From Octopus sinensis (lineage: Eukaryota), in NCBI RefSeq assembly GCF_006345805.1, contig NC_043000.1:75516001-75580000 (forward strand): a stretch of DNA of 64,000 nucleotides, in the 5' to 3' direction. The translations under genes were made by a program, and so were the position numbers. Below are positions 17,233 through 51,841 of this stretch, piece after piece. The notes beneath the pieces are model-generated. The model was not told the DNA's origin and did no database searches. It worked only from the letters and a program-made list of their open reading frames with translations. Positions within the stretch are counted from its first letter, which is position 1. Every line of letters starts with the position of its first letter.

Positions 17233-18094
17233 TCTCTATATTATAATTCTGAAATGCAAAAAGTTTGTTTGTCTGGTTTTGGCATTAGAACGGGTTAAAG
17301 GGCACTAGATCCCATCGGATTGACTCCAAAATTTACAGAGACATGTAAAATGTGGTGAGGATGTCAGTGAGCTAGCTTAGAAATTCCTATCTTAAAAGGT
17401 ATGGTGACTAGGGCGAAAAACGCACACTTTGACAAGTCTACTCTCATTTTTTTATCTGTCTGTCTTCCTCCATCTCTCTCTCTTTCCTCCCTTCCTTTCA
17501 CATTCTCTCTATAACGTCGTTTGATAGCGTCTACTATCTTTCCTCCGCCGCCTTCAATATTTTTACGCTTTTTAAACCCTTCGTCGTTATTCTCATTCAC
17601 TTATTATTACTTTCTCTCTCCCCACTCTATCTATATATAGAGAGAAAGATTCTCATGATTGTGTGGTGGTGGCGATGATAATTCTCTCTATGAATGCAGA
17701 CAGACATAGAGAGAAAGAGAGAGTGACAGCGCTGGCGAAGGCAGTGGAGGAAAGATAGTAGACGCTATCATACAACGTTATAGAGAGAAAGTGAAAGGGA
17801 GGGAGCAAGTAATAATGAGTGAATGAGAATAATGACGAAGGGTTTAAAAAGCGTAAAAATATTTTCTTTCTCCACTTAATCAAGATCTTTTGTTGTTTAT
17901 AAATGGGAAAGAGATAGAGAGTAAGAGAAAGTGAGGGAAAGTCCGAGAGAAATGAAGAGTAAGAGAGTGGGAAAGTGAGAGAGAAAGGAGAGAGAAACAA
18001 AGAGGGAGAATGTGGCGATAAGAAACAGAAAGGAAGCAACAGAAAGTAACAACCACAACCTCACCCGCGCGTAAAGTGGGTCACCTTAAGCTAG
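17233..18094 (+). mobile_element. Non-autonomous Helitron (second family) with an internal inversion
   Basis: 5' A|TCTCTATATTATAA; 3' hairpin CCCGCGCGTAAAGTGGG followed by TCACCTTAAG-CTAG. Confidence 0.8.
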
Positions 18095-18510
18095 TCTCTA
18101 TATTATAATTCTGAAATGCAAAAAGTTTGTTTGTCTGGTTTTGGCATTAGAACAGGTTAAAGGGCACCAGATCCCATCGGATTGACTCCAAAATTTACAA
18201 GTATATGTAAAATGAGGTGAGGATGTGAGTGGGCTAGGTTAGAAATCCCTATCTTAAAAGGTGTGGTTACTAGGGAAAAAAACGCACACTTTGACAAGTC
18301 TACTCTCATCTGCCTGTCTTCCTCCATCTCTCTTTCCTCCCTTCCTTTCACATTCTCTCTATAACGTCGTTTGACAGCATCTACTGTCTTTCCCCCGCCG
18401 CCTTCGCCAGCGGTGTCACTATTTCTCCCACACACCCCCTCTCTCTCTCTACGTCTGTCTGCATTCATAGAAAGAATTATCATCACCACCACCACAACAC
18501 AATCATGAGA
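18095..18510 (+). mobile_element. Head-to-tail second copy of the same Helitron, 3'-truncated
   Basis: The junction is CTAG|TCTCTATATTATAATTCTGAAATGC, with no intervening bases. Confidence 0.8.
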
Positions 18511-19941
18511 ACAAATATTATGAATCAGATATTTATTGGGTTAATTTATATATGTGTATGTGTGTGTTCTATATATTAATATGTATATATATACAAAGTG
18601 TATATATCTGTATTTATATATATATATATATGCATATATATATATATAATTTGTATATATAATACGTACACACACACACACACATATATATAATGCGTAC
18701 ATATGTACATGTATATATTTAATGCGTATATAATCCTTTAATTTTTTTAACCCCCCCCCCCCCCCGGTATGAAGTTAATTCGTTCGTTTACCGTCCCCAA
18801 TCAAAATCTTCGCCATTACTGTTCTCAATCAAAACTTCTGTCTTTCCAACTCACTTCTTCCGGTCAGTCTATTTAAATTTTACCTCGTGCTCCTCTTCTA
18901 CTCATTCTTTCTTCGACCACAGCGATGTCCAAAGCAAGCTAAAAATTCTCATTTCATTTCTTCCGATCCCCGTACTGCATACATACATTTGCCGCTAATG
19001 CTTAAATGTTTGAATCTATTCGCTAATCTGCTTGTTCTTTTCTCCACGAAATATAATCCTTTAATTCTTTTAACCCCCCCCCCCCCGGTACGAAGTTAAT
19101 TCGTTCATTTACCGTCCCTAATCAAAATCTTCGCCATTACTGTCCTCAATTGCTTAATTCTTCTCACTACTGTCCCCAATCCAAATCTTCGCCATTCGCG
19201 GTGCGCCTGCCCTTTCCCACGCCCACCACCAATACTGGAGAATATTCTGTTTACACCATCTACACCAGATATCCCCTCTCCCACCACCATTACGTGTGTC
19301 TATTCCTCCTACCCCTCCTCCTCAATATGCTTTTGCACTATGTATTAACCCAAGACAGAAGCAGCTAGCGCCGCAGCTCATCAACCGTCCCACTTAACCA
19401 GTTATCTTACGTTTCCTCCTGTTTTGAAATCTGTCACTGCCTCAACCAGCTATCTCCTCCCAGTCCCCTCCCCCATTCGTGATATGCTACGTTTTATTCT
19501 GTCTAGAACCTGCCACCAACCCTACCTGTCATCGTTTCTCCTTACCCCAATCCTCCCCACCGGTGCTCCCCTATATTACCTGCACCCCCCCACTTTCTCT
19601 CTCTCTCCCTCTCTTCTCTCTGCTGGAACCCTTCCCCGCCGCAATGCAACCAAAAATTTTTTCTCAGCTGGAACCCGCCCCCCAACCCAACACTAGAATA
19701 TCCATGTTTCTGCTACGCTGCTTAAACCACGTTACTCAGTGACCATAATGTTTGCTGAGAATGCTACTAACACCTAGAATTTCAGTATTTTTGCCACAGA
19801 GCTTACATCTACATCATCAATGACCTTAGTGTTTATGCTTACAACGCTGCTAACACCAGCTCCTACCTACGACAGGGGCCACAACCTTAACATGCCTAAA
19901 TGCTTGAATGTTGTCAGGTTGGAAGAGAGATCAGATGAAAA

Positions 19942-20889
19942 ATGCCTAAAAAACGATCACCACCACAACAACCCTCCTCTTCTTTTCAGGCGCTGAATTG
20001 CTCCCCTCCTCCCCACATCTCCTTCCCAGTTTTCAGAGTTGGCACTGTCAATGTTGGTACATTGAAAGGCAGGTCTAGTGAGATTGTAGAGATGCTTGAG
20101 AGAAGACGGGTTGATGCATGCTGCATACAAGAGGTAAGATGGAGAGGTGCTTCAGCTAGGGTCCTCACAGGCAAGGCACATAGGTATAAAGTCTTCTGGC
20201 AAGGTAACATGGATGGTGTAGGGGGTGTAGGCATTCTCCTTGCAGAGAAATGGGTGGATAAGATTGTCAGGGTTTGCGATAGAGTGCTTAAGCTCAGGTT
20301 AGTCCTACAGAGTGGCACAGCTATGATTATCTCCGCCTATGCCCCACAAGCGGGACTATCAAATGATCAGAAGGACCACTTTTATGATACCCTTCTACAG
20401 GCTACCTCAAAGACTAGTGGCAAGGACCTCATCTTTGTGGGTGGAGACTTTAATGGGCATGTTGGGCGGGAATTGGGTATCTTCACTGGGGTACACGGTG
20501 GCCATGGTATTGGCACCAGAAATGATAAGGGAACTAGATTACTGGAATTCTGTGATGCATGTAACCTTGTAATCTGCAACACTAACTTCAGGAAGCCTGA
20601 CTGCCACCTTATAACCTATCAGTCAGGAGACTCCGCTAGACAAATAGACTTCATCCTCACAAGACAGCGGAATGCAGGGTCGCTCTTAAATATAAAGACC
20701 CTCCCGGGTGAAGAATGTATCCCTCAGCATAGGCTAATCATCAGTGACTTTAAGCTTGAGGCCAGAAGGACTCCAAGAAACAAACCAATCCAGAAAAGAA
20801 GGATTTGGAAGCTAAAGAACCCTTCACATGGTCAGAGATTTAGGGACATCCTCATCAAGAAATTTGATGAGAGGGAGGAGGAGCTTTAG
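19942..20889 (+). pseudogene. RTE AP-endonuclease fragment
   Basis: 315-aa ORF with canonical APE motifs, ending at a premature stop. Confidence 0.85.
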
Positions 20890-21623
20890 ACGTCGGACAT
20901 AGAAGGTAGCTGGGAATTCCTACGGGACAGCTTGCTGAGTGCCACAGACCAAGTCTGTGGATGGTGCAAAGTCCCTTCCAGACCTAGAGTTACGTGGTGG
21001 TGGAATAGTGTAGTAGACAAAGCCATTAGTGCAAAGAGACAGGCCTGGAAAGCCTGGAGGGATGGGGGTAGCAGGGAACTGTACCAGGTAGCCAAAAGGG
21101 AGGCTGGGCGGCAGGTATACATAGCCAAAGATGTAGCAGAAAAGAAGAAGTTTGCCAATGTCCAGCGACGTGAGGACCAAGGAGCTGAGGTATTTCGGCT
21201 TGCCAGACAGTGTGTGAGAGAAAACAGTGATGTTGCAGGAGAGAAATGTGTCCGCATGGATGATGTGGCACTTGCTTTTAATGTTGGTGAAAAGAAAGAG
21301 GCTTGGTGAAGCCATTACGAAAGACTGCTGAATGAGGAGAATGAATGGGAGGAGGAGAGCCAGCCAAATGTTGACCCAGTAGAGAGACTAGCTATCTGAA
21401 TAGACAGCTCCCTTGTAGTTAAGGCAATTAAGGACATGAAACCAGGAATCACTGCTGAGATGCTTAAAACAGCTGGCTATGTGGGCTATGGCCTAGTCAC
21501 CCGCATTGTAAGCCAGGTAGTTCATAATGGAGTCATACCCAATGACTGGCGTAGCAGCACCATAGTCAACTGCTACAAGGGTAAGGGTGATGCTCTAGAT
21601 AAAAATAACTACAGGATCAGGAG

Positions 21624-22433
21624 ATGAAGGTCACAGAGAGGGTCATAACCCATCTCATTAGGGGGAGAATTTGCTTAGATGAGAAGCAGTTCGGTTTTGT
21701 GCCGGGTAGAAGCACCACTGATGCTATACTCCTGGTCCGACAACTGCAGGAGAAGTACCTAGCTAAAGATAAACCCCTCTACATAGCTTTTGTGGACTTG
21801 GAGAAAGCCTTTGACAAGGTTCCCCGATCCCTTATCTGGTGGTCGATGCAGAAACTGGAGATTGACGATTGGCTAATAAGGGCTGTACAGGCTCTATACA
21901 GAGAGGCTGTCAGCAAGGTTAGGATTGGCAACGAATATAGTGAAGAATTCCGGGTAGAAGTAGGTGTACACCAAGGCTCAGCCCTCAGTCTCCTTTTATT
22001 CATCATAGTCCTCCAGGCAATAACAGAGGAATTCAAAACAGGATGCCCCTGGGAGCTCCACTATGTTGATGACCTGGCTCTCATAGCAGAATCACTACCG
22101 GAACTAGAAAAGAAATTTCGGGTGTGGAAGCAAGGGTTAGAATCAAAGGGCCTTAGAGTAAATGTAGCAAAGACCAAAGTTATAGTAAGCAGAAAGGCGA
22201 ACTCAGCACACACCCCCTCAGGCAGGTGGCCCTGCTCGATCTGTAGGAAAGGTGTAGGTAGAAACTCCATAAGATGCACCCAATGTAAGCTATGGACGCA
22301 TAAGAGGTGCAGCAACATCAAAGGGAAATTAACTGATAAGATAGCTCTCATGTGCGGCAGATGCACAGGGACAATAGACACCACAGACACTCAGAAAACA
22401 GATTCCATCACACTCCAGGGGGAGAAACTATAA
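21624..22433 (+). pseudogene. RTE reverse-transcriptase fragment with a C4HC3 (PHD-like) finger
   Basis: QFGFVPGRSTTDAI, AFVDLEKAFD, GVHQGS, YVDD; CSIC-x10-CTQC-x4-H-x2-C-x14-CGRC. Confidence 0.85.
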
Positions 22434-23120: not shown

Positions 23121-23482
23121 ACCTGTGCCGGTGGCACATAAAAAGCACCATCCGTACGTGGCCGTTGCCAGCGCCGCCTCGACTGGCTTCTGTGCCAGTA
23201 GCACATAAAAAGCACCATCCGAACGTGGCCGATGCCAGCAACGCCCTGACTGGCTTCTGTGCCGATGGCACATAAAAAGCACCGTCCGAACGTGGCCGAT
23301 GCCAGAGCTGCCTCGACTGGCTCCAGTGCCGGTGGCACATAAAAAAGCACCATCCGAATGTGACTGTTGCCAGCACCGCCTTGGCTGGCTTCCGTGCCGG
23401 TGGCACGTTAAAAGCTCCAACCGATCGTGGCCGATGCCGGACCCCCCTGGCACCTGTGCAAGTGGCACGTAAAAAGCACCCA
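23121..23482 (+). repeat. Tandem array of about 5.5 units of about 67 bp in the RTE 3' UTR
   Basis: Unit approx. gtgccggtggcacataaaaagcaccatccgaacgtggccgatgccagc...gactggctt. Confidence 0.9.
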
Positions 23483-29009: not shown

Positions 29010-32000
29010 TCAAGTAGCTGTTTGGATGAGGTGTAATCTCTCATGACGATTCTTGTTACTATTCTGAGAGAATGCTTTGTCACAGAACTTACATTTATAA
29101 GGTGTTTCCCCTGTATGAGTCCTCATGTGAACATCTAAGTGAGCAGATTGTTTGAAGCTACGTTCACAGTAGCTACATTTATATGGAGTTTCCCCTGTGT
29201 GTACTCGTCTGTGTGTAAGCAGTGAAGAAAAACTCTTGCAATCTTTGTTACAGTATTCGCATACATGTTTTTGCAAACCATTGTCAAAGTTAGCAGAGAC
29301 AGACTTCTGGCTGCCTATTATTTTTGAATTGCAATCATCAATGTCTTGGTTACTAGCTGATGTTATATGCTCAGAGAATTTGTGTTCTACTAGAGCATCA
29401 TTTGTTTGAAATATTTTGTCACACATTTCACACTGGTGGCAAGAAATATTTTCACCAAAGTTATCATATGTCATACTTTGGTCGTCAAGTCTATTTTGAT
29501 TAAAAACTTCTGGCTTTAACTCTTGTTCATTGGCAAGAAATCCTTTGACTTCCATAATACATCTTTTCTTTGTGTCACTCAGTCTCTTAGATTTTCCATG
29601 TGGGACTTGGTTTTGGTTAGATTCAGCATTTTCACCTTGATGGTGCCTTTTATTTGAATTTTGATTCAAATCTAAAAGTGTAGTCCCAAGATCATAGCTT
29701 GTATCTTGATGTGTTTGGGTGTGTTCATTTAGGTCATTTTCTGTAGAAAACATAGCAAAACAAATGTCACAGCAGTAACTTTGACATGGTTTTTCAGAAG
29801 TAGTTACTGCTGAATTAACAGAATTTTTAGAAAATATTTGACTACTACTGAGTTCAAGTTGTGCTGCAGTTTCACTGCTCAGGTGAACTTTCTCATGCCT
29901 ATTCTTGTTACTGTTCTGTGTGAATGATTTGTCACAAAACTGGCATTTAAAAGGAGTTTCTCCAGTGTGTGTTCTTAAATGGACATCAAGGTGTGCAATC
30001 TGTTTAAATTGTCGTTTACAATAAGGACACTTAAATGGTGTCTCCCCAGTGTGTACACGTCGATGAATAAGCAAAGATGATAAACTTTTGAATGTCTTGT
30101 TGCAGAACTCACACACACTCAGTCCACTGTTATTTCCATTCTGTTCTGAAAACCCAGAAACTTCAGTTTCTCGTGAAAGGTCTTGATCAAGTAGAGTTGT
30201 GGTAAATATTTCGTCATCATTACAGGAGTTCTCAAAACTTTTAGAGTCATGTTCTTCATATCTTTCCTTATTGCCAGAGTCAAAAGTAGAGGAGCAAGAG
30301 TGAGAATAGAAATCTTCTTTATTATAAAATTCTTTTTTACACTGCTCACATAAATAGCAGACTTCTCTAATATGGTCAACAGGAACATCGTCAGTAGAGG
30401 TGTATGAACTTGCTTCCTGATCACATGGTGTCTCGGAGATATGCTGAAATACATGTTCAGTGTATTGTGTTTTATCTGTAAAATTTTGCTGGCAAATCTC
30501 ACATAAATAAAATGCCTTTTCAGTAACAGATGTTGCATCTTTCTCTGAAGTGGTGTTTAAAGTGTGTGACTGCTTATGTCTTTCAAAATATCCTTTGTTA
30601 ATGTAGTTTTTACCACATATATTGCACGAGTAAGGTATGCTTGAAAGCACATTATCAGTGTTGCCTCCTGCTTCTTCAAGTGAAATTACCTTAGAACATT
30701 TATGCTTGCTTAAAGCACTGGCATTAGCAAACCGACCATCACAGATGGTACACAGGTGAACTGTTTTAGCAGCAGCTTTAGCTCTAGCTTTCATCCTCTT
30801 TTTCCAAGCCACATGAATACGATGATGACGATCACAATTACTTTTCTGACTGAAAGATCGTCGACAGTAGTTACATTTGAATGGAGTTTCCCCTGTGTGT
30901 ATTCTAGAATGAGTTTCTAAGTGAGCAACTTGCTTGAAGCTTTTCAAGCAGTATGTACATTGGTAAGGTTTCTCTCCTGTGTGTACTCGCCGATGTATGA
31001 TAAGTGCAGATTTACTACGAAACTGTCGTGAGCAGAAATCACATCTAAAGTGTGAATTTCTTAAGTAGTACTTAGAGTCTTTAGGGAAGGACAAGTTCAC
31101 TTCACTTTGGGAGCCTTCCTTGTCAGCTGGTTGTTTGTTGTTAGTATTCACAGGTAGCTTCTTATCGTCACCAGCATCTATTTCCTCTTTTAAAACACTC
31201 ATTTGCTGAGAGTCTCCCATGTAAATGGAACCAGTCAAGTCACTATTATTGACTTCTATTTTAGGCTCATTTGGGGGATGATACTCTAGAGGAATGATGT
31301 TAAGAACAGATGATTTCCTTTCCTTTTCAAAAAGTTGGTTATAATATAAAGGCTTTTTATCTTTCCATTGCTGTTCACTATTAGTCATAAGCTCATGGTC
31401 ATCTGAAGAATCTCTGTTTCTAGAATCAGAGTTTGGTTCAAGTGACACATTATTTTCAGATGGAGTAATATTGTCCACAACAGCTGAACTATCCACTGTG
31501 GTAATATCAGCTAGATGCATACGTTGATGACGAATTCGGTTACTGTTTTGTGTAAATTTTTTGTCACAAAATTGACAGTGATAAGGAGTTTCTCCTGTAT
31601 GCGTTCGCAAATGGACATTGAGATGAATATTCTGTTTAAATCTCCGATTGCAGAGGTGGCATTTGTAGGGAGATTCCCCAGTGTGAATTCTACGATGAAC
31701 ATGCAGTGCAGAGCTACTGTTGAATCCTTTCTCACAAAATTCACATATATGTTGGTCAAGAAGCAGGTTTCCATCCCCCCGATTACATAGTGTAGATAAT
31801 AGCTCTGCACCAGTCACAACTTCATAATTTTCTTTAGCTTCCTCATGAACAGATATCCTGTGTTGATGTAGTTTTTCTTCATTAGTAAACTCTATGTTAC
31901 ATTGATGACAAAAGTATCCTGTTCGATCTGCATCAGGCAAGCAAGTTGATGTTGTTTCCATAGCAGTATCAATACCACAAGGATTTTCTGTGTCTTTAGA

Positions 32001-35000
32001 ACTGTCTTTTGTAATAAAAGTTTTTTTTAGTTGATGTAAAGGGTTTTCATAATCTTCAAGAAGAATTTCTTTTTTTATCAAATTTTCAAAATCTAATATT
32101 TGTGAATTCTTCTTATACTTAAAGTGAGTTTGTTTTGAACTGTCTTTTTGCTCTTCATCATTGTCTTCCCTCTCTGCAACATTGTCACTGTCTTCCCCAT
32201 TCTCCAGATGACCACTACAGTCAGGTTGAGGAGTAGCAAGACCTTCATCTTCAGAACAATTCCCAAATTCTTCAACAGTCATATGCAAAGAAGGTTCTTC
32301 AAGGTTTATTGAAAGTGCTCTTGGTTTATTTTGCTTAGTAACATGATCAGTAAATTCTTTTTGCTCTGAATGTGTAGCCATGTGACAATTAAGATGTATG
32401 GCAAGAGTAAATTCTTCACCACAAATGTTGCATGGAAACAGATCTACTGTTGCATCATGTTGCTTAGCTTTTGATGGTTCAACATTATTTTTTAATGTAA
32501 AATGTGAAGATCCATCTTCAGACATGACAGTAGTAATTAGGCCAATATCATCTGTTGCTACAGGAACCAGTCTTGAAGAACCTTTACACAACTTCTGATG
32601 TTTATTTAAAACAGACTCAGTTCTGAATTTAATTCCACAAAAATGACAACTGAAAAATATTTCACTTGGTTGACTTACATTTTTATCTGAGTAACTAGAC
32701 TTGTCTGCTTCTTTAAGACTGTAGTTATTGTCTGAAGATAAACTTGGTATGTGCTGCAAGTCATCATTAGGGAAAGAATCTGTTTCTAATACTAGACTTA
32801 CAGAACAATTTGGTACATCTACATCATTATGTGCAAGTTTATCATTAGCTGCGAAACAAATTGTTTGGTGATCAGTGAGGTCCAAACCATTTTCAAACAG
32901 TGCTCCACATACTGGACAAGTAAAACATAATGCACCATTTTGCTCAGCTGATGAACCAGTTGCCCCATTGCTGTCATTCTGGAGCTCAGCCCTTGGAGAA
33001 TTTTCATTGGATTGTGTAGTAGTATTGTTGTCTAACTGATGAGTTTTTTCATGCCGAAGTCTGTTGTTGTTCTGAGAAAAACTTCTGTCACAATACTGGC
33101 ACTTGTATGGTGTCTCACCCGTATGTATTCTCATATGAACATCTCTGTGTGCTGCTTGTTTAAAGCTTTTTTGACAAAAACTACACTTGTAAGGAGTCTC
33201 TCCTGTATGTACACGTCGATGTGTAATGAGAGCTGAAGTACTATTGAATGTCTTCTGGCAAAACTCACAACTCTTCTCAGATGGGCCTTGACCAGCAGAA
33301 TCTTTCAATAAATTCATGCTGGACTGACAGTGGGTAGAATTTCTATTGCTAAACATTGTTGAAGGCTGGTCCATATGATGAGACACTTGGTGTACATTAA
33401 GTTCATCTTTATTCACAAACTGTACACTACATAACTCACATTCATTATTCCCAATAACTTTCAGACTATTCTGGCAGTTTTTCACAAAGTAACCACCATT
33501 ATTTTCACAATCTGATACACTACACCCATTTAAAGGGGTCTTGTCACAATTACTTCCCATCTGTAGGTTACACTCACCAGCATTTACTGAATGTGGATTA
33601 CACTGTTTACATTTATTATTAGATCCAGTCAAACCTCTCTCACAACAGTTCCAATCTTCAGGAGTTCCATTTTCAGAATAGAAACTCTGTGAAACAGACT
33701 GCAATTTTCGTTTTTTCTTATATTCTTCTGGTTGTCCATCTTGTAAGCAAGGAGTGTTGTGGCAGTTAAGATGATCTAAAAACTCTTCATAGTTGCTGAA
33801 CTTTGAAATACAAAATTCACAATTGTATATATGATCTCCAGCCTGGTGGCTAGCTGACTGCTCATAACTACCATCTAAATTTTGTGGTTGCAGGTGAATC
33901 TTCTGGTGTCTTATTCGGTTGCAGTTTTGACTGAACTTCTTACTACAAAATGCACATTTATAAGGTGTCTCCCCAGTGTGTATACGTAAATGTACATCAA
34001 GGTGAGCAACTTGCCTAAAACCACGATGACAGTATTCACATTGGAATGGCATTTCTCCTGTGTGTATTCGTCGATGGATCACCAAGGCAGAGTGGTTACG
34101 GAAATCTTTCTTACAAAATTCACATATGTTTGAATTGGTGGAAACCAAAGGAGAATCTGATTTATTCATTTGGTCAGCCACTGCAGCACATGTATTTGAT
34201 GGAGTTAAAGCTGCAGTCATATCCTGATTACACTTTACTGAATGATTAGTTGAAACAGTGTGACACAATTTATGTTTAATCAAGTCTTGCCGGGAATTAA
34301 AATGGAAGTTACATGTTTTACAACTGAAAAGTTTGTTGTTAATACCTGCCAAATCTTCTTTATTACTTGAAGTTATGTTGGTGCTTCCTGTTATTAAATG
34401 TCCTTTGTTGCTGGGACTAGATGTGAAGGAGTTATCTCTTTCTTCAAAATCACCATTCTCAAGTTGATGACAAGATCTAGGTTGATTAAAATTATTCCTG
34501 GCAATAACCTCTTGTGAATGTTTGACCTGTTGATGATAATGGAGGCTCGCAATGTCAGGAAAAAACTTCCCACAAAGCTCACATTTGAAAACACCTCTGT
34601 CAGAGAAGTTGCTATTATTATGAATAAATTCATCAGAAGCTGATTGAGATTTTCTCATCATCTCTATACAGTTATTATGAGAGTTTTGGTGATCCATAAA
34701 ACTTGTATAATTAGTAAACTTTGAATTACAGATCTGACAGTCATGAGTTCCAAGTCTTTCAACAGGGGTATAGCTCATATCACTGGAAACAAAATTTGTT
34801 GAAATACTATGCTCACTGGTTTTTAAGCTTGCTGCTTCAATCCAATTATTTGTTTTGGATTCTTTGTTTTGAGAATTTTCTATGTAACCAGCTTCATAAA
34901 GCAATTCCCCAGATTGTGACCTTGACTGAACTTCAATGTTGCAATTGTTTGGTTGGAAACTTTTGGAACTTTCATTTCCTAAATGGCCTAATGTACTCAT

Positions 35001-37352
35001 ATTGTTATTCAAAACTACAAGAGAATTATTAGCTGATGAAGATATGTAAGGGATTTCACCTGGTATTAAGCCCAAAGGTCTCTCCTGTATTTTATTTGCT
35101 TCAGTTTCACAATTATCTTTGGAGACAGGGAATGAGTTTTTTCTATGAGATGAAGCTATATGTTGGTCTAAGCCAGCCTGATCTGTAAATGTCTCATTAC
35201 AAACTCTACACTGACTGTCTTTAATACTAGCTGTCCCAGAATTATTGCAGTTTATTTCAGGTGTGTGATTATTATGACTATTGCTTTGACTTAATAAATC
35301 AGGTAGATTGTCATGTGATAATATATGTGTTATGAAACTATTAGGTTCTGAAAATTCATTCCCACATGTACATTCAGTTAGAGACTGAAGTTTTTCAACC
35401 TGGTTGCCAGAATATACCTCATTCTTGTCACACTTATCCTTTGATTCAGTAGCAGCTTCATTCATATGTGTATTCATATGCCGGTTTCTGTTGCATTTCT
35501 GACTGAATTTTTTGTCACAATAGAGGCACTGAAATGGCATTTCTCCTGTATGAGTTCTCATATGGACATCAAGATGAGGTACTTGTTTAAAGCTTTTGTT
35601 ACAGTAGTCACATTTATAAGGCATCTCTCCAGTATGAACCCGTCTGTGGACAGCTAATGATGAGCTGCTTTTAAAATCTTTATGACAGAATTCACAAACA
35701 GTAACTCCCTTATGACACTGCATGTGCCTTTGAAGTTCAATGTTAGTGACAAACTCTTTTGTGCACATTTTGCAAATAAATGATGAATGGTTCCTTGATG
35801 AAGTATTGGAATTTAACAATTCACTTGAAGCTGACATGCATGTGTTGTCATTACATATTGTTTGGGCTGAGAGTTTACTTCTGGAGTTGTTATACTTCTG
35901 AATATTTGTTGCCTCCGCTGTTTGATTCTCTACAGCCTCTCTACTGGTGTTATCACTTAAAACAAACTGTTCTGTAGTCTTCTGAAAAGGATATGGTTCT
36001 GTATTTTGCCGGAATGAGGAAGAGTGAGTAGCTGCACAAGTACAATCTTTGATGGGGCTCTGGCAAAACTCACAAATAGCTAGATTACTTTTATCACTAT
36101 AAACATTGTCTGCATCAATATTAACAAACTGTTTGTAGTTTATATTAATTCTGACTCCCTCATGATCAAGCAAAGTTTCAAATTCACAACCAATAATACT
36201 GTTTGTGTGACATACTTCTCTGGTTGATGGCAGTAGTGTATTTACTTTACCAGTATCTCCTTCTTTGTTTAAAAAGTGAGTACGCTCATGGCGATTTTTG
36301 TTGCCTTTCTGTGAGAATCCTTTATCACAGTATTGACACTTAAAAGGAGTTTCCTTACTATGCACCCTTAAATGGGCATCCAAATGGGCACTCTGTTTGA
36401 ACCTTTGGTTACAGATATGACAGATATATGGGCTTTCTCCTGTATGTGTTCTGTAGTGCACTTGTAATGCTGATTTGCTGTTAAGAGTTTTGTTGCATAA
36501 GTGACATATATGAGATGTTTGTGGTGTCCGTTGTACAATCAAATCATTAGATCTGCTTTGATCTGTTGAAATGGAAGGTGTCAAAGAAGATTCTTTCACA
36601 TCAGAAACAGTGAAACTCTGAGATGTGTTAGGAACACTGGAAGTATGAATTGGGGATGTGGCTGCGTTTGGGTCAAAGTTTATTCCAGATATAGTAGGAT
36701 TTTGTTCTATGTTACCGTTTAAGTGGATTAACTCATGTCTGTTTCTGTTGTTCTTCTGGTTAAAAGATTTATTACAATAATTACATTTAAATGGTGTTTC
36801 TCCAGTATGAATTCTCATATGGACATCTAAGTGTGCAGTCTGCCGAAAGTTCTTGCCACAAAACTCACAGGAATAAGGAGATTCACCAGTGTGACTGCGG
36901 TTATGAATCAGCAAAGCTGAGTTTGTTTTAAATGTTTTGTGACAGAATTCGCAGGTAAAATTCTGTGACATCTTTACAGTATTTATATTAGAATTATCTG
37001 TCAGTGATTGATAAATCTTTTGAGGAAAACCTGTGTCTAATATGGCTTGTGAAGTAGTATTAGTTAAATGGGTACACCTGTGTTGCATGAGGCTGCTCTT
37101 TTGTGAAAAATTGGTACTACAGAATTCACATAAAAACACTCCATTTGTAGAATGATGAACAGAAAACATGTGTTGTTCCAAGGAAGAATTGCTGTCAAAG
37201 ATTTTGCTACAGATCTCACATTTGAAAATATTTTGTGAATTGTGACGTGACCTAAGGCTGTAACATCCCTTGTCAGATATCTGATTGACATTAAGCGAAC
37301 CATTATTACCAGATAATGGCAGCTGGTTCTCTTTGGAACTGGAGAACATCAT
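29010..37352 (-). CDS. Giant C2H2 zinc-finger protein, 2,780 aa, about 47 fingers in clusters and singletons, CDS in one exon
   Basis: Uninterrupted 8.3-kb ORF in a background of decayed repeats. Repeated CxxC-x12-HxxxH with TGE(T/S/M/K)P(Y/F) linkers. An in-frame TAA lies shortly upstream of the ATG (5 intervening codons). Confidence 0.97.
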   Translation of the reverse strand: MMFSSSKENQLPLSGNNGSLNVNQISDKGCYSLRSRHNSQNIFKCEICSKIFDSNSSLEQHMFSVHHSTNGVFLCEFCSTNFSQKSSLMQHRCTHLTNTTSQAILDTGFPQKIYQSLTDNSNINTVKMSQNFTCEFCHKTFKTNSALLIHNRSHTGESPYSCEFCGKNFRQTAHLDVHMRIHTGETPFKCNYCNKSFNQKNNRNRHELIHLNGNIEQNPTISGINFDPNAATSPIHTSSVPNTSQSFTVSDVKESSLTPSISTDQSRSNDLIVQRTPQTSHICHLCNKTLNSKSALQVHYRTHTGESPYICHICNQRFKQSAHLDAHLRVHSKETPFKCQYCDKGFSQKGNKNRHERTHFLNKEGDTGKVNTLLPSTREVCHTNSIIGCEFETLLDHEGVRININYKQFVNIDADNVYSDKSNLAICEFCQSPIKDCTCAATHSSSFRQNTEPYPFQKTTEQFVLSDNTSREAVENQTAEATNIQKYNNSRSKLSAQTICNDNTCMSASSELLNSNTSSRNHSSFICKMCTKEFVTNIELQRHMQCHKGVTVCEFCHKDFKSSSSLAVHRRVHTGEMPYKCDYCNKSFKQVPHLDVHMRTHTGEMPFQCLYCDKKFSQKCNRNRHMNTHMNEAATESKDKCDKNEVYSGNQVEKLQSLTECTCGNEFSEPNSFITHILSHDNLPDLLSQSNSHNNHTPEINCNNSGTASIKDSQCRVCNETFTDQAGLDQHIASSHRKNSFPVSKDNCETEANKIQERPLGLIPGEIPYISSSANNSLVVLNNNMSTLGHLGNESSKSFQPNNCNIEVQSRSQSGELLYEAGYIENSQNKESKTNNWIEAASLKTSEHSISTNFVSSDMSYTPVERLGTHDCQICNSKFTNYTSFMDHQNSHNNCIEMMRKSQSASDEFIHNNSNFSDRGVFKCELCGKFFPDIASLHYHQQVKHSQEVIARNNFNQPRSCHQLENGDFEERDNSFTSSPSNKGHLITGSTNITSSNKEDLAGINNKLFSCKTCNFHFNSRQDLIKHKLCHTVSTNHSVKCNQDMTAALTPSNTCAAVADQMNKSDSPLVSTNSNICEFCKKDFRNHSALVIHRRIHTGEMPFQCEYCHRGFRQVAHLDVHLRIHTGETPYKCAFCSKKFSQNCNRIRHQKIHLQPQNLDGSYEQSASHQAGDHIYNCEFCISKFSNYEEFLDHLNCHNTPCLQDGQPEEYKKKRKLQSVSQSFYSENGTPEDWNCCERGLTGSNNKCKQCNPHSVNAGECNLQMGSNCDKTPLNGCSVSDCENNGGYFVKNCQNSLKVIGNNECELCSVQFVNKDELNVHQVSHHMDQPSTMFSNRNSTHCQSSMNLLKDSAGQGPSEKSCEFCQKTFNSTSALITHRRVHTGETPYKCSFCQKSFKQAAHRDVHMRIHTGETPYKCQYCDRSFSQNNNRLRHEKTHQLDNNTTTQSNENSPRAELQNDSNGATGSSAEQNGALCFTCPVCGALFENGLDLTDHQTICFAANDKLAHNDVDVPNCSVSLVLETDSFPNDDLQHIPSLSSDNNYSLKEADKSSYSDKNVSQPSEIFFSCHFCGIKFRTESVLNKHQKLCKGSSRLVPVATDDIGLITTVMSEDGSSHFTLKNNVEPSKAKQHDATVDLFPCNICGEEFTLAIHLNCHMATHSEQKEFTDHVTKQNKPRALSINLEEPSLHMTVEEFGNCSEDEGLATPQPDCSGHLENGEDSDNVAEREDNDEEQKDSSKQTHFKYKKNSQILDFENLIKKEILLEDYENPLHQLKKTFITKDSSKDTENPCGIDTAMETTSTCLPDADRTGYFCHQCNIEFTNEEKLHQHRISVHEEAKENYEVVTGAELLSTLCNRGDGNLLLDQHICEFCEKGFNSSSALHVHRRIHTGESPYKCHLCNRRFKQNIHLNVHLRTHTGETPYHCQFCDKKFTQNSNRIRHQRMHLADITTVDSSAVVDNITPSENNVSLEPNSDSRNRDSSDDHELMTNSEQQWKDKKPLYYNQLFEKERKSSVLNIIPLEYHPPNEPKIEVNNSDLTGSIYMGDSQQMSVLKEEIDAGDDKKLPVNTNNKQPADKEGSQSEVNLSFPKDSKYYLRNSHFRCDFCSRQFRSKSALIIHRRVHTGEKPYQCTYCLKSFKQVAHLETHSRIHTGETPFKCNYCRRSFSQKSNCDRHHRIHVAWKKRMKARAKAAAKTVHLCTICDGRFANASALSKHKCSKVISLEEAGGNTDNVLSSIPYSCNICGKNYINKGYFERHKQSHTLNTTSEKDATSVTEKAFYLCEICQQNFTDKTQYTEHVFQHISETPCDQEASSYTSTDDVPVDHIREVCYLCEQCKKEFYNKEDFYSHSCSSTFDSGNKERYEEHDSKSFENSCNDDEIFTTTLLDQDLSRETEVSGFSEQNGNNSGLSVCEFCNKTFKSLSSLLIHRRVHTGETPFKCPYCKRQFKQIAHLDVHLRTHTGETPFKCQFCDKSFTQNSNKNRHEKVHLSSETAAQLELSSSQIFSKNSVNSAVTTSEKPCQSYCCDICFAMFSTENDLNEHTQTHQDTSYDLGTTLLDLNQNSNKRHHQGENAESNQNQVPHGKSKRLSDTKKRCIMEVKGFLANEQELKPEVFNQNRLDDQSMTYDNFGENISCHQCEMCDKIFQTNDALVEHKFSEHITSASNQDIDDCNSKIIGSQKSVSANFDNGLQKHVCEYCNKDCKSFSSLLTHRRVHTGETPYKCSYCERSFKQSAHLDVHMRTHTGETPYKCKFCDKAFSQNSNKNRHERLHLIQTAT

Positions 37353-37435
37353 CTTATCAGAAGAAGCTTAGTTAAGCTTGCAACAAAATCCTGAGCTGCA
37401 AGTAACATACATGGACACTTCACTATTGGTGCCAT
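37349..37435 (-). promoter_or_regulatory. 28-codon upstream ORF whose TGA overlaps the main ATG
   Basis: ATG GCA CCA ... ATA AGA TGA (MAPIVKCPCMLLAAQDFVASLTKLLLIR*); junction ...ataagATGAtg. Confidence 0.5.
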
Positions 37436-37521
37436 GTATATTTCTGTAAAGTATAACATCCAATCAGAATGAGTCCAACTCAGGTAAAGTACAACAGGAA
37501 TGGTCAAATTTGCAGGAAAAT

Positions 37522-37550
37522 CTGTAAAATAACAGGAAATAAAATCAATA
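37522..37550 (-). promoter_or_regulatory. Probable splice acceptor of the zinc-finger exon (alternative AG at 37444-37445)
   Basis: Minus strand ttttatttcctgttattttacAG, a pyrimidine tract followed by CAG. Confidence 0.5.
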
Positions 37551-38399
37551 ACTTAAAAAGTAAGATTTCAATTTCAGTTCTTTTCATTTTTTAAAATATT
37601 TTTTTACAATGGTGGTGATTTTAATTACAGTTAGAATATCTTTCATCATAGATCTCAATCAGAGCTGACCTGGGATTAAATAATAACAATATAGTAAAAG
37701 GGTCATAGACATCCCCTACTGAACAAACTGTACTTTACATATACCACTGATTGTCCAGTGGAACCCAGAATAAATTGGAGCATAAAATAATACGATAGAG
37801 TTGTAGGTTCTCTTGAGCATTTTCAAATTTCTACATCCATACTAATCTGCTTGTTTTATGTTGGCAACTTCTTTATACACACCCCAAAGGTCCCAAACAA
37901 TGGCATAAAAACATGACAAAACTTAAGTACATGTTCATTAGATGCACAAATTTAAATGGTAAACTATTTCTCAGAAATCTCTGCTCACCTCCATTGAAGT
38001 ACCTCTTCATTTTGAATATGACCTTTTTAGGTAATGACCATCACTTTTCTCTGTTAAATATACATAGTGTTTGAGAATTCCCAGTCCAAATCTTGAACTC
38101 TGTCAGTCAAACTGAAAAGAACTGCTCTCACTCTGTAATTGAGTGGTTACAGATGGGAGAAAGGATTTACTTATAAATCAAAAGTACTCCTCCAATATAT
38201 GATTGCAACCCTAACATGTCTTACATAGAAAACATCTGCAAATAAACATCAAGCCATGCAGTGTTATATGTTTTAATTTCTAGATTATTATAGAATTTCT
38301 AGATTATTATAGAATTACAACCAGTTAGGTTAATTACTGGTAGAATGATTAATTATGTGTGGTTTTTAATGACATAAAAAGGTGGTGACCTTTTCCAGA

Positions 38400-47649: not shown

Positions 47650-49053
47650 ATGAAGGTAATGAAGGTTACGGAGAGGGCCATAGCCCAACTAATTAGAGAG
47701 AGAGTTAGTTTAGATGAGATGCAGTTTGGGTTCGTGCCAGGGAAAAGTACCACTGATGCCATATTCCTGGTAAAACAGCTGCAGGAGAAATATCTAGCCA
47801 AAGATAAGCCCCTGTACCTGGCTTTCGTTGACATGGAGAAAGCCTTCGACAGGGTCCCCCGATCCCTTATCTTGTGGTCAATGAGGAAACTAGGGATAGA
47901 TGAATGGTTAGTGAGAGCTGTGCAAGCCATGTACAGGGACAGTGCTAGTAAGGTGAGGGTTGGCAACGAGTACAGTGAACAATTCCGGGTAGAGGTAGGG
48001 GTCCACCAAGGTTCAGTCCTCAGCCCCCTCCTATTTATCATAGTCCTCCAGGCAATAACGGAGGAATTCAAGACAGGATGCTCCTGGGAGCTCCTCTACG
48101 CTGAGGACCTTGCTCTAATTGCTGATTCACTATCAGAACTGGAGGAGAAGTTTCAGGTGTGGAAGCAAGGATTAGAATCGAAGGGCCTTAGAGTCAACCT
48201 AGCTAAAACCAAAGTCCTAATAAGTAGGAAGGTAGACAAGTCACAAAAGCCTTCAGGTAGATGGCCCTGCTCGATCTGTAGAAAAGGCGTAGGTAGAAAC
48301 TCTATAAGATGCACCAAGTGTAAGCTAAGGACACATAAGAGGTGCAGCAATGTCAAAGGAAGGCTAACTAGGAAAATAGTTTTTGTATGTGGCAGATGCT
48401 CAGGAGCAATCAACACTGAAAATGCGCAGAGACCAACTTCCGCCACATTCCAGGGAGAAAAACTAGAAATAGTTGATAGCTTCTGTTACCTAGGTGACCA
48501 AGTCAGTAGCGGGGGCGGGTGTGCTGAAAGTGTAACTGCTAGAGTAAGAATAGCCTGGGCAAAGTTCAGAGAGCTCTTACCTCTGCTAGGGACAAAAGGC
48601 CTCTCGCTCAGAGTAAAAAGCAGACTGTATGACGCATGTGTACAAACAGCCATGCTACATGGCAGTGAAACATGGACCGTGACTGCTGAGGATATGTGTA
48701 AGCTCGCAAGAAATGAAGCCAGTATGCTCCAAGGGATGTGTAATGTCAGTGTTCATACTCAACAGAGTGTAAGTACCTTGAGAGAAAAGTTGGACCTGAG
48801 AAGCATCAGTTGTGGTGTGCAAGAGAGACGTTTGTGCTGGTATGAGCATGTGGCGAGAATGGATGAAGATAGTTGTGTGAAAAAGTGCCACACCCTGGCG
48901 GTTGAGGGAACCTGTGGAAGAGGTAGACCCAGGAAAACCTGGGACAAGGTGGTGAAGCACGACCTTCGAACTTTAGGTCTCACCGAGGAAATGACCAGAG
49001 ACCGAGACCTTTGGAAGTATGCTGTGCATGAGAAGACCCGGCAGGACAAGTGA
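47650..49053 (+). pseudogene. RTE RT, PHD-like finger and C-terminal region; catalytic motif YAED
   Basis: ORF track 47650-49053; WELLYAEDLAL. Confidence 0.85.
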
Positions 49054-50944: not shown

Positions 50945-51740
50945 ATCTAGCGATTAACTAAATGTTTTTAAGTTCACGGAAGTCATGTCTCTGTACGAAT
51001 TCATACAGTGGTGCTTGCTGTTGTTCACCGATAGTGCTGTCTGTGAAACACGTTTTTCACCATGTAAACAGATGAGTGTATGATGCATGTGCTTATTGTA
51101 TTTGGAGATGAGGAAAATGTAAAGGTTATGAGGGAACCACTGATCTAGTGATTAATTGAAAGCTTTTAGGCTTACCAAAGTCATGCCTTTGTACAAATTC
51201 AAACAGTGGCATTTGCCAGTGTTTGCCAATAGTGCTGTCTGTGAAACATGTTTCTCACCATGTAAACAACAAGTGTATGGTGCATGTGTTTATTGTGCTT
51301 CAAGATGTATGCAGGCTCGCAGCATATCCTGTGCATACATTTTAGTAATGTAGCACCCATCAACAGATGTGTAGTGCTCACTATTATAAGCACTGAGCAT
51401 TCCATTATAAGCACCAAGCATTCCACCTAAAGATCAGGCTACAACAAGGTAGCCACACAATTTTGTAACAGTGTTATTTCTATGTACAAAATGATATAGT
51501 ACCTTGGCCCACAAATGTTGTCCTGTTCACAAATACTAGGGTTGACTTTTATACAGGGTCTATGGAAAATTTTGCTTTTTGGCCCAAAATAGCGGGTTGA
51601 ACTTTTACATGAGATCAAGTATATACGGTCATCCAAAATTGCGAGGATGATCTGGTTCTTGACTAAAGATTAGAGGCTTCAAATGACCCGTCCGTTTTTT
51701 GAATGTTTTGCGTTCTTGTCCCATTTTGTATTTTTATATA

Positions 51741-51841
<101 letters not shown>

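What the first reader, a model, noticed from the sequence alone, without database searches (positions are those of the whole stretch)
29010..37352. Giant ZNF built from nine copies of one three-finger module with the same DNA-contact code
Seen in sequence: of about 47 fingers, 27 form nine TGExP-linked triads separated by long Ser/Asn-rich spacers. The spacers and singleton fingers are fully diverged. The recognition helices of the triads are largely conserved (positions -1, 2, 3, 6): F1 mostly (S/T/N)-S-(A/S)-(I/V/T); F2 mostly Q-A-H-V; F3 Q-(N/S/G/C)-N-R. Established knowledge: Q/N/R at -1/3/6 reads GAA (as in QSSNLVR), and Q/H at -1/3 reads NGA. Inference: every module may bind about the same 9-bp site, 5'-GAA-NGA-N(T)N-3'. 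That would make the protein a nine-valent binder able to coat or bridge repeats such as satellites, SINEs or microsatellites. This differs from a KRAB-type array that reads one long site. No KRAB, BTB, SCAN, SET or ZAD domain was recognised.
Basis: partly seen in the sequence, partly recalled or inferred. Interest (0 to 1): 0.8.

Follow-up and report, generated by a model that had tools for sequence, protein, structure and literature searches.

The report
Octopus giant zinc-finger protein, repeated triads
A single 2,780-residue octopus gene carries nine ancient, strongly conserved copies of one three-finger DNA-binding module with nearly the same base-contact residues, so it is probably a many-handed binder of one short DNA motif, but what it binds in the cell is untested.

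Summary
Window 29010-37352 (-) is one uninterrupted 2,780-aa ORF: Octopus gene LOC115211127, annotated "uncharacterized". It has 44 strict (46 relaxed) C2H2 fingers, and 27 of them form nine TGExP-linked triads.

The triads are old, not recently converted. Paralogues are 63% identical in protein and 64% in DNA, and synonymous sites are saturated (pS 0.86).

A colinear, distant orthologue (P0002, 35% identity overall) has 10 intact triads plus one decayed. F2 Q(-1)/H(3) and F3 Q(-1)/N(3)/R(6) are invariant in 19 of 19 triads.

In three species pairs, dN/dS is 0.013-0.016 for triads and 0.20-0.27 for spacers.

An AlphaFold model of a triad (pLDDT 89.5) superposes on DNA-bound Zif268 and Aart.

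- The singleton fingers are not fully diverged. They form an acidic class at recurring positions, and several are conserved between orthologues.
- The protein is built from about ten units of roughly 285 aa. Triads have been lost or have decayed in both lineages.

The shared 5'-GAA-nGA-nTn-3' site and the multivalent mechanism remain inference. The idea has precedents (HIVEP1/PRDII-BF1, Sall), and look-alike giant proteins exist in other animals. I rate it a new variant of a known kind, of moderate interest.

The parts
29010..37352 (-). Single-exon CDS of LOC115211127, 2,780 aa plus stop. It holds 44-46 C2H2 fingers.
36723..36953 (-). Triad T1 (aa 134-210). Contact codes TSAI / QAHV / QNNR.
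   Evidence: The codes are identical in the P0002 orthologue at aa 180.
36276..36506 (-). Triad T2 (aa 283-359). Codes SSAV / QAHA / QGNR. This is the most divergent triad, and its second linker is SKETPFK.
35466..35696 (-). Triad T3 (aa 553-629). Codes SSSV / QPHV / QCNR. A singleton finger lies 5 aa upstream.
   Evidence: The QPHV quirk is conserved in P0002.
33894..34124 (-). Triad T4 (aa 1077-1153). Codes NSAI / QAHV / QCNR.
   Evidence: Its P0002 counterpart at aa 1260 has decayed.
33039..33269 (-). Triad T5 (aa 1362-1438). Codes SSAT / QAHV / QNNR.
   Evidence: The codes are identical in P0002 at aa 1548.
32286..32516 (-). Relic of a tenth triad (about aa 1613-1689). Only the middle finger survives (aa 1641-1661, CNICGEEFTLAIHLNCHMATH). 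It aligns to the intact P0002 triad at aa 1842.
31515..31745 (-). Triad T6 (aa 1870-1946). Codes SSAV / QIHV / QSNR.
30813..31043 (-). Triad T7 (aa 2104-2180). Codes SSAI / QAHT / QSNR.
   Evidence: QAHT is conserved in P0002 and P0129.
30237..30800 (-). Block of conserved atypical singleton fingers (aa 2185-2372). It includes two C2HC-like fingers and is 42% identical to P0002 and to P0129.
29883..30113 (-). Triad T8 (aa 2414-2490). Codes SSSI / QAHV / QSNR. This triad was modelled with AlphaFold2.
29031..29261 (-). Triad T9 (aa 2698-2774). Codes SSST / QAHV / QSNR. It ends 6 aa before the stop codon.
33705..33719 (-). KKKRK (aa 1212-1216), the only run of four or more basic residues. It is a candidate nuclear localisation signal; this is inference.

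Best explanation
**What it is.** This is a single-copy gene, found here only in Octopus species and two unnamed Logan assemblies, and conserved among them. It was built by ancient tandem duplication of a unit of about 285 aa. Each unit contains one canonical Zif268-like three-finger DNA-binding module. It also has one or two acidic, probably non-DNA-reading singleton fingers set in a long, low-complexity Ser/Asn-rich linker.

**What is shown.**
- The ancestor had at least 11 such modules. Octopus keeps 9, plus one relic.
- All modules keep essentially the same base-contacting residues under extreme purifying selection.

**What is inferred.**
- Each triad most likely reads about the same short core, 5'-GAA-(n)GA-3', through F3 and F2. 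F1 adds a weakly specified 3' triplet (nTn).
- One triad alone would bind a site of about 6 informative bases, too short to be specific. The protein would therefore gain affinity and selectivity by avidity, engaging many copies of the motif at once.
- Because the flexible 70-450-aa linkers set no fixed spacing, targets could be tandem repeats, homotypic site clusters, or sites on different DNA segments that become bridged.
- Small triad-specific differences, conserved between orthologues, may fine-tune individual modules.
For: - **Architecture:** nine triads in one ORF. Triad start-to-start spacing is 285 +/- 34 aa in P0002, and 234-310 aa in octopus once the lost and relic triads are counted.
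- **Age:** paralogous triads are 63% identical in protein and 64% in DNA, with pS 0.86 (saturated). Triads T1, T3, T7 and T9 are reciprocal best matches of their positional orthologues in P0002. Cross-species identity at contact positions is 0.86 for orthologous triads and 0.70 for non-orthologous ones.
- **Constraint:** dN/dS for triads / singletons / spacers is 0.013 / 0.155 / 0.273 against O. bimaculoides, 0.016 / 0.089 / 0.252 against P0124, and 0.015 / 0.037 / 0.205 for P0129 against P0002. Only 2 of 693 triad residues differ from O. bimaculoides, and neither is a contact residue.
- **Contacts:** F2 Q-1/H3 and F3 Q-1/N3/R6 are invariant in 19 of 19 triads, and F1 S2 in 18 of 19. The four triads of P0129 carry the same codes.
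- **Competence for DNA binding:** TGExP linkers are present. PDB sequence matches are DNA-binding fingers. The AF2 model has pLDDT 89.5, and its inter-finger arrangement matches DNA complexes 2I13, 1ZAA, 1MEY and WT1 at TM about 0.7 and 2.4-2.8 A.
- **Code-to-triplet mapping:** supported by published engineered-module tables.
- **Not part of a ZNF cluster:** the 64-kb window has no other ZNF ORF, and no other protein retrieved carries the signature.
Against: - There are no binding data of any kind.
- F1 contacts are small or hydrophobic and vary between triads. F2 position 6 (V/T/A) and F3 position 2 (S/N/G/C) also vary. These variants are conserved between orthologues, which fits distinct tuned sites as well as it fits one shared site.
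- Triads can be lost or decay: two in octopus and one in P0002. High valency as such is therefore not strictly required.
- F3 has R or K at helix position +4, a core position that is usually Leu. Zif268 finger 3 has the same feature (4x9j sequence), so this does not disqualify the finger.
- The window shows no motif-specific enrichment.
- The taxa of the distant orthologues are unnamed, so the claimed phylogenetic depth rests on sequence divergence alone.
Confidence: 0.55

Rival explanations
1. The protein is a multi-cluster transcription factor with related but distinct sites. Each triad shares the GAA-nGA core but is tuned by F1, by F2 position 6 and by F3 position 2 to a different 9-10-bp site. 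The protein would then read a set of different regulatory elements or composite sites, as classical multi-cluster ZNFs such as ZNF423/OAZ or TFIIIA use finger subsets for different tasks (general knowledge, not tested here).
For: - Triad-specific contact variants are conserved between positional orthologues: T1 TSAI/QNNR, T3 QPHV, T5 SSAT/QNNR, T7 QAHT, T2 QGNR.
- Orthologous triads are more alike than paralogous ones at contact positions, 0.86 against 0.70.
- No homogenisation has occurred over a long time.
Against: - The five residues that carry most of the specificity never vary in 19 of 19 triads.
- The variable positions are small side chains with weak discriminating power.
- Non-orthologous triads still share 70% of contact residues.
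Confidence: 0.25
2. The triads are conserved for a role other than double-stranded DNA binding, such as RNA binding or protein scaffolding. The giant protein would then be an RNA-binding or assembly platform, with the acidic singletons as interaction modules.
For: - The summed Pfam score to the dsRNA-binding zf-C2H2_jaz family has E 3.7e-16, but no single stretch is significant on its own.
- Singleton fingers have acidic helices (mean charge -1.1) that are unlikely to read DNA.
- Single C2H2 fingers can mediate dimerisation (abstract of PMC12774644).
- WT1 fingers also bind RNA (6WLH appears among the fold matches).
Against: - The triads have canonical TGExP linkers.
- Q, H, N and R are conserved exactly at base-contact positions, while the other exposed helix positions +1 and +5 vary freely.
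- The modelled inter-finger geometry is that of DNA complexes.
Confidence: 0.1
3. The gene is an ordinary product of the cephalopod C2H2 expansion or of recent internal duplication and gene conversion. On this reading, the similarity of the triads reflects youth rather than selection.
For: - Cephalopods have large lineage-specific C2H2 expansions (PMC12513265).
- Other giant ZNFs with near-identical repeated triads do look like recent duplications, for example Callorhinchus P0216.
Against: - Synonymous sites between triads are saturated: pS 0.86, and the minimum finite dS is 1.9.
- The triad order is colinear with an orthologue that is only 35% identical.
- Triad dN/dS is 0.013-0.016 in three independent pairs.
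- The 64-kb window holds no neighbouring ZNF genes.
Confidence: 0.03

Closest known systems
HIVEP1 / PRDII-BF1 / MBP-1 and Drosophila Schnurri (ZAS family)
   Same: This is a very large protein with widely separated C2H2 modules joined by long non-finger regions. The separated modules recognise the same DNA sequence (Fan & Maniatis 1990, as cited in PMC3668361 and PMC5892016). It is the conceptual precedent for one protein with several copies of one specificity.
   Different: HIVEP has two finger pairs, not 9-11 triads. Its fingers carry the Sal-box, which is absent here. It reads a kappaB-like site. No sequence orthology was found.
Spalt/Sall family
   Same: Several copies of one type of finger module are spread along a long protein. 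As here, orthologous modules are more similar across species than paralogous modules within one protein, which points to an ancient arrangement (PMC5892016). The F1 motif S-x-S-A-L-x-x-H-x-R-x-H-T-G-E resembles the first finger of Sall pairs; that resemblance is from my own knowledge and was not tested.
   Different: Sall modules are pairs, with four or five per protein. The family is defined by the Sal-box FTTKGNLK, an N-terminal NuRD-binding peptide and a poly-Q tract. None of these is present here.
Zif268/EGR1-type and designed three-finger units (Zif268, Aart, consensus 1MEY)
   Same: Each triad is a canonical three-finger unit. The AF2 model superposes at TM about 0.7 and 2.4-2.8 A. R or K at helix +4 of finger 3 also occurs in Zif268 finger 3 (sequence shown). 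QxAHL and QxxNxxR helices resemble the engineered AGA/TGA and GAA modules.
   Different: EGR proteins have a single triad, C-x4-C spacing in finger 1, and RSDxLxR-type helices that read GCG-TGG-GCG. None of these features is present here.
Multivalent satellite-DNA bundlers: Drosophila D1 and Prod, mouse HMGA1
   Same: This is a functional analogy only. Many copies of one short DNA-binding module on a flexible chain let one protein bind repeated sites and bundle them into chromocenters (PMC5957525).
   Different: D1 and HMGA1 use minor-groove AT-hooks rather than zinc fingers. A satellite target for the octopus protein is hypothetical. Octopus lacks an AT-hook, although P0002 and P0129 have one KRGRPKG motif.
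Other giant ZNFs with repeated three-finger modules: Callorhinchus milii LOC103189828, Protopterus annectens LOC122809357, Patiria miniata LOC119725802
   Same: These also have repeated isolated triads with one shared contact code, separated by long spacers and interspersed with singleton fingers. The architecture is therefore recurrent in animals.
   Different: Their contact codes are different: QSSR-QSDK-QETK, DNGR-DSTR-QxQx and SDLR-TAHE-xSDx. The Callorhinchus copies are nearly identical and so look recent. All three are uncharacterised and could be gene-model concatenations. They are not homologous in code to the octopus protein.

Membership tests
Kruppel-type C2H2 zinc-finger proteins (Pfam zf-C2H2 / zf-H2C2_2) | C-x2-4-C-x12-H-x3-5-H fingers with TGEKP-like H/C links | tested here: met
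   PF00096 E 1.8e-128 and PF13465 E 7.5e-101. The regex scan finds 44 fingers. Seventeen of the 18 intra-triad linkers read TGExP, the exception being SKETPFK in T2.
Kruppel-type C2H2 zinc-finger proteins (Pfam zf-C2H2 / zf-H2C2_2) | beta-beta-alpha fold, with three fingers wrapping DNA as in Zif268 | tested here: met
   AF2 pLDDT is 89.5 with three beta-beta-alpha units. Foldseek top hits are all DNA-bound three-finger structures at TM about 0.7. This is a prediction, not an experiment.
KRAB / SCAN / BTB / ZAD zinc-finger families | An N-terminal effector or oligomerisation domain | tested here: not met
   Pfam reports only C2H2-type families at E <= 0.01.
Spalt/Sall | Sal-box FTTKGNLK in the C-terminal finger of each pair, plus a poly-Q tract and an N-terminal NuRD-binding peptide | tested here: not met
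   There is no Sal-box (strict or loose pattern) and no Q run of five or more. The N-terminus is MMFSSSKENQ.
HIVEP / Schnurri (ZAS) | Two separated finger pairs with a Sal-box-like second finger | tested here: not met
   The modules are triads and have no Sal-box. No HIVEP protein appears among the best homology hits.
EGR / Zif268 | A single triad, C-x4-C in finger 1, and RSDxLxR-type helices | tested here: not met
   There are nine triads. All F1 fingers have C-x2-C. The helices are (S/N/T)xSALxx, QxAHLDV and QxxNRxR.
Lineage-specific cephalopod C2H2 expansion genes | Membership of tandem gene clusters with many close paralogues and rapid turnover | tested here: not met
   There is no other ZNF ORF in the 64-kb window. 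No paralogue carries the signature. The order is colinear with an orthologue at 35% identity, and dN/dS is low.
dsRNA-binding zinc fingers (JAZ / ZFa, PF12171) | U1-like fingers with long helices and H-x5-H spacing that bind A-form RNA | tested here: inconclusive
   The summed E-value is 3.7e-16, but no stretch passes on its own. A few singletons have H-x4-H spacing.
Multivalent same-site DNA binders (functional class) | Every module binds the same DNA motif, and affinity depends on valency | not testable with these tools
   Only the identity of contact residues and the code tables are available. Binding assays are needed.

The most novel reading that the evidence does not exclude
This may be an architectural chromatin protein, so far detected only in cephalopod-type sequences. 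On this reading, its 9-11 equivalent three-finger 'hands' on flexible linkers coat or bundle a short purine-rich tandem repeat. A GAAA-type microsatellite is one candidate, because it reads GAA-AGA in register; a satellite carrying GAAnGA is another. That would make it a zinc-finger counterpart of the AT-hook satellite bundlers D1 and HMGA1. It would also be the first example of a poly-zinc-finger protein whose specificity arises from avidity of repeated identical modules rather than from one long contiguous array.
Probability: 0.2. Interest if true: 0.8.

Novelty: new variant of a known kind. Interest (0 to 1): 0.55.

Why it matters
Poly-zinc-finger proteins are usually thought to gain specificity by reading one long site with a contiguous array.

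A protein that instead keeps 9-11 copies of one short-site module would show a different logic. The copies have been held nearly constant at the base-contacting residues since before two deeply diverged lineages split, while everything between them drifts. Specificity would then come from avidity on repeated or clustered motifs.

This makes a concrete and cheaply testable prediction: one motif, 5'-GAA-nGA-nTn-3', with binding that depends on valency. It concerns an uncharacterised, strongly constrained gene in cephalopods, a group known for an unusual C2H2 repertoire.

Analogous repeated-triad giant proteins in a chimaera, a lungfish and a sea star suggest that the design has arisen more than once.

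Tried and rejected
1. **Recent gene conversion or young duplication.** Rejected. Nucleotide identity is no higher than protein identity, pS is 0.86, and positional orthologues are reciprocal best hits.

2. **Annotation artefact or pseudogene.** Rejected. The ORF is uninterrupted, and intact ORFs occur in three Octopus genomes and on separate Logan contigs. dN/dS for the whole protein is 0.17.

3. **Orthologues outside cephalopods.**
   - Word-indexed searches with the octopus protein and with P0002 found only Octopus species, P0002 and P0129.
   - So did an exhaustive profile search of 1.84 billion representatives, followed by signature and architecture scans.
   - A search with the singleton-only block (A3) returned two weak generic hits. 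It also failed to return the query's own proteins, so that negative is weak.
   - Only the best 120-150 hits of each search can be inspected, so relatives with few triads could be hidden.

4. **Motif enrichment in the window.** GAANGA occurs 202 times against 141 +/- 11 expected. However, it ranks only 10th of 32 purine-only patterns. This is a generic homopurine effect and not evidence.

5. **Literature.**
   - No paper mentions the gene or protein identifiers.
   - The cephalopod C2H2 paper contains none of the six terms searched, including 'triplet', 'linker' and 'recognition'.
   - No usable octopus satellite consensus was found.

6. **Taxon of P0002 (SRR27666080) and P0129 (ERR12370324).** This could not be determined with the tools. 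No named close relatives exist in the databases.

7. **Sall, HIVEP and EGR membership.** Tested and not met.

8. **A second structure prediction.** I considered modelling a singleton-triad-singleton unit and did not run it. Only two or three orthologous sequences were available, so any inter-domain contacts would be unreliable.
Full report
**1. What is there**

Window 29010-37352 (minus strand) is one uninterrupted ORF of 2,780 codons. It is the RefSeq gene LOC115211127, 'uncharacterized protein'.

The encoded protein is identical to cluster member P0121. It differs at 6 residues from the O. vulgaris entry P0001. P0121 lies on the same 164.8-Mb contig as the O. sinensis isoform X2. The window is therefore from the O. 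sinensis/vulgaris complex.

Pfam finds only C2H2-type families.

The rest of the 64-kb window holds LINE and LTR retrotransposon fragments and no other zinc-finger ORF. The gene is therefore not part of a tandem ZNF cluster.

**2. The observation**

A strict pattern scan finds 44 fingers. A relaxed scan adds two C2HC-like ones.

Twenty-seven fingers form nine triads joined by 7-residue TGExPxx links. They start at aa 134, 283, 553, 1077, 1362, 1870, 2104, 2414 and 2698.

- F1: (S/N/T)-S-(A/S)-(I/V/T)
- F2: Q-A-H-V, with a few variants
- F3: Q-x-N-R

Spacers are rich in Ser (13%) and Asn (11%). Disorder-promoting residues make up 65% of them.

**3. Age of the repeats**

The nine triads are 63% identical in protein but only 64% in DNA. 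Nei-Gojobori pS between them averages 0.86, which is saturation. The lowest finite dS is 1.9.

**4. Orthologues**

Close orthologues exist in O. bimaculoides (P0122), in O. vulgaris, and in another octopod sample (P0124, 91% identical).

One distant orthologue is P0002: 3,021 aa, from a Logan assembly of SRR27666080, and 35% identical overall. It is colinear with the octopus protein and has 10 intact triads plus one decayed.

P0129 (ERR12370324) is a C-terminal fragment of a third, P0002-like orthologue with four triads.

The taxa of P0002 and P0129 are not named anywhere I could search. The level of divergence would suit a squid or cuttlefish, but that is a guess.

Octopus triads T1, T3, T7 and T9 are reciprocal best matches of their positional counterparts in P0002. 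The array therefore predates the split and has not been homogenised since.

**5. Constraint**

| Pair | Triads | Singletons | Spacers |
|---|---|---|---|
| Window vs O. bimaculoides (dN/dS) | 0.013 | 0.155 | 0.273 |
| Window vs P0124 (dN/dS) | 0.016 | 0.089 | 0.252 |
| P0129 vs P0002 (dN/dS) | 0.015 | 0.037 | 0.205 |
| Octopus vs P0002 (protein identity) | 69% | 40% | 21% |

Only two of 693 triad residues differ between the window and O. bimaculoides. Neither is a contact residue.

Across 19 triads, F2 Q(-1) and H(3) and F3 Q(-1), N(3) and R(6) never vary. F1 S(2) is present in 18 of 19.

Mean column entropy is 0.75 bits at contact positions. It is 1.63 bits at other non-structural positions, 2.4 bits at helix +1 and 1.8 bits at helix +5.

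**6. Competence for DNA binding**

Sequence searches of the PDB hit canonical DNA-binding fingers: ZFP568, Aart, CTCF, PRDM9, Zif268 and WT1.

An AlphaFold2 model of T8, built on the 19-triad alignment, has pLDDT 89.5 and three beta-beta-alpha units.

Foldseek places the model on DNA-bound three-finger structures 2I13, 1ZAA, 1MEY and WT1, at TM about 0.7 and 2.4-2.8 A. This includes the relative arrangement of the fingers.

F3 has R or K at helix +4, which is usually Leu. Zif268 finger 3 has the same feature (the 4x9j sequence printed).

**7. Predicted site (inference)**

Published engineered-module tables give the following:
- QSSNLVR reads GAA.
- QLAHLRA reads AGA.
- QAGHLAS reads TGA.
- Helices with A or S at +3 (DPGALVR, RSDALTR, TSGSLVR) read GTn.

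Fingers read DNA from 3' to 5'.

As a speculation, GAAA-type tetranucleotide repeats read GAA-AGA in register.

No binding predictor or assay was available.

In the window, GAANGA occurs 202 times against 141 +/- 11 in shuffles. This is not specific, because it ranks 10th of 32 purine-only patterns.

**8.

(a) The singleton fingers are a class of their own.
- Across the 31 singletons of the two species, the consensus is C-[ED]-[ILV]-C-x3-F-x-[NTD]-x-[DE]-x-[LFY]-x-[DEQ]-H.
- Mean helix charge is -1.1, against +2.3 for F3.
- They recur 33-45 aa (octopus; 18-49 aa counting P0002) before a triad or 20-40 aa after one.
- The block at aa 2235-2365 is more than 50% identical to P0002.

(b) Triad starts are spaced 285 +/- 34 aa apart in P0002. 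In octopus the spacing is 234-310 aa once two missing positions are counted. The protein is therefore a tandem array of about ten units of roughly 285 aa.

(c) Valency changes over time:
- The P0002 triad at aa 937 is deleted in octopus, but its downstream singleton is kept.
- The P0002 triad at aa 1842 survives in octopus only as a relic middle finger (aa 1641).
- The P0002 counterpart of octopus T4 has decayed.

(d) Triad-specific contact quirks are conserved between orthologues: T1 TSAI/QNNR, T3 QPHV, T5 SSAT, T7 QAHT. The modules may not be strictly equivalent.

**9. Distribution and comparison**

Three kinds of search returned only Octopus species, P0002 and P0129 as carriers of the triad signature:
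- two word-indexed searches;
- one exhaustive profile search of 1.84 billion representatives;
- signature scans of everything retrieved.

Only the top 120-150 hits of each search can be inspected. The singleton-block search did not return even its own source proteins. 'Cephalopod-restricted' is therefore provisional.

The same design with other contact codes appears in uncharacterised giant proteins of Callorhinchus, Protopterus and Patiria.

Conceptual precedents are two:
- HIVEP1/PRDII-BF1, which has two separated finger pairs that recognise the same sequence.
- Sall, which has four or five separated Sal-box pairs. As here, orthologous modules are more alike than paralogous ones.

The defining Sal-box, poly-Q tract and N-terminal peptide are absent here.

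The functional analogy to the multi-AT-hook satellite bundlers D1 and HMGA1 (PMC5957525) is hypothetical.

**10. Verdict**

The reading 'many equivalent DNA-binding hands' is the best-supported mechanism, at about 0.55. It rests on contact-residue identity and on code tables, not on binding data.

The repeat-coating role is a reasonable but untested extension, at about 0.2.

I classify the finding as a new variant of a known kind. It belongs with multi-module C2H2 proteins that have repeated same-type modules, but it has unusually high valency, three-finger modules and very strong long-term constraint.

Noticed in passing
window 19942-22433 (+), 47650-49053 (+), 544-984 (-), 8235-8618 (+): These are LINE-type retrotransposon fragments. 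They include an endonuclease/exonuclease/phosphatase ORF followed by a reverse-transcriptase ORF, plus further RVT_1 ORFs. One RT ORF carries a weak PHD/C1-like Cys-rich tail.
   Followed up: partly
window 58356-61053 (-): This is an LTR-retrotransposon-like pol fragment. An RVT_1 ORF (60176-60619) lies upstream of an integrase-core ORF (58778-59386), split over several frames.
   Followed up: partly
window 23123-23480: A 67-nt tandem repeat is present in 5.4 copies at 79% match, in a GC-rich stretch that also gives long spurious ORFs on the minus strand.
   Followed up: no
window 17233-17555 and 18095-18405; 18728-18829 and 19051-19150: There are two local direct duplications in a CT-rich region with strong negative GC skew. 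One has spacing of about 860 nt at 89-93% identity. The other has spacing of 321-323 nt at 95-97% identity and includes a C13 tract.
   Followed up: no
window 51735-51831: A (TA)49 microsatellite.
   Followed up: no
window 29010-37352 (protein level): The window protein is identical to P0121. It differs at 6 residues from the O. vulgaris representative P0001: S857N, R1021Q, C1248R, F1571S, T1607S and R1939Q. R1939Q lies at helix +4 of T6 F3. The search tool's '100% identity' is rounded.
   Followed up: yes
window about 34482-34511 (aa 948-957): RefSeq isoform X2 (P0123, 2,770 aa) lacks 10 residues, EVIARNNFNQ, in a spacer. A 30-nt gap is too short for a normal intron, so it may be an indel or a model artefact.
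   Followed up: no
L001 (P0002 aa about 2011-2030) and L003 upstream of nt 288: An AT-hook-like motif, KRGRPKGSRSYFKIERQPSP, is conserved between P0002 and the P0129 contig but absent from the octopus protein. In L003 the reading frame is broken further upstream, so that contig may be genomic with an intron, or misassembled.
   Followed up: partly
proteins P0216, P0125 and P0170 (not in the window): Callorhinchus milii LOC103189828, Protopterus annectens LOC122809357 and Patiria miniata LOC119725802 are uncharacterised giant ZNFs. Each is built from repeated isolated triads that share one contact code, and that code differs from the octopus one.
   Followed up: partly
window 37353-37620 (-): Polypyrimidine-AG motifs (tttacag, cttgcag) lie 40-95 nt upstream of the ATG. 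This suggests that the coding exon is preceded by a spliced 5'UTR. Not verified.
   Followed up: no
tool behaviour: The word-indexed search with the singleton-block alignment A3 did not return the proteins the alignment was made from. Its negative result should be given little weight.
   Followed up: no
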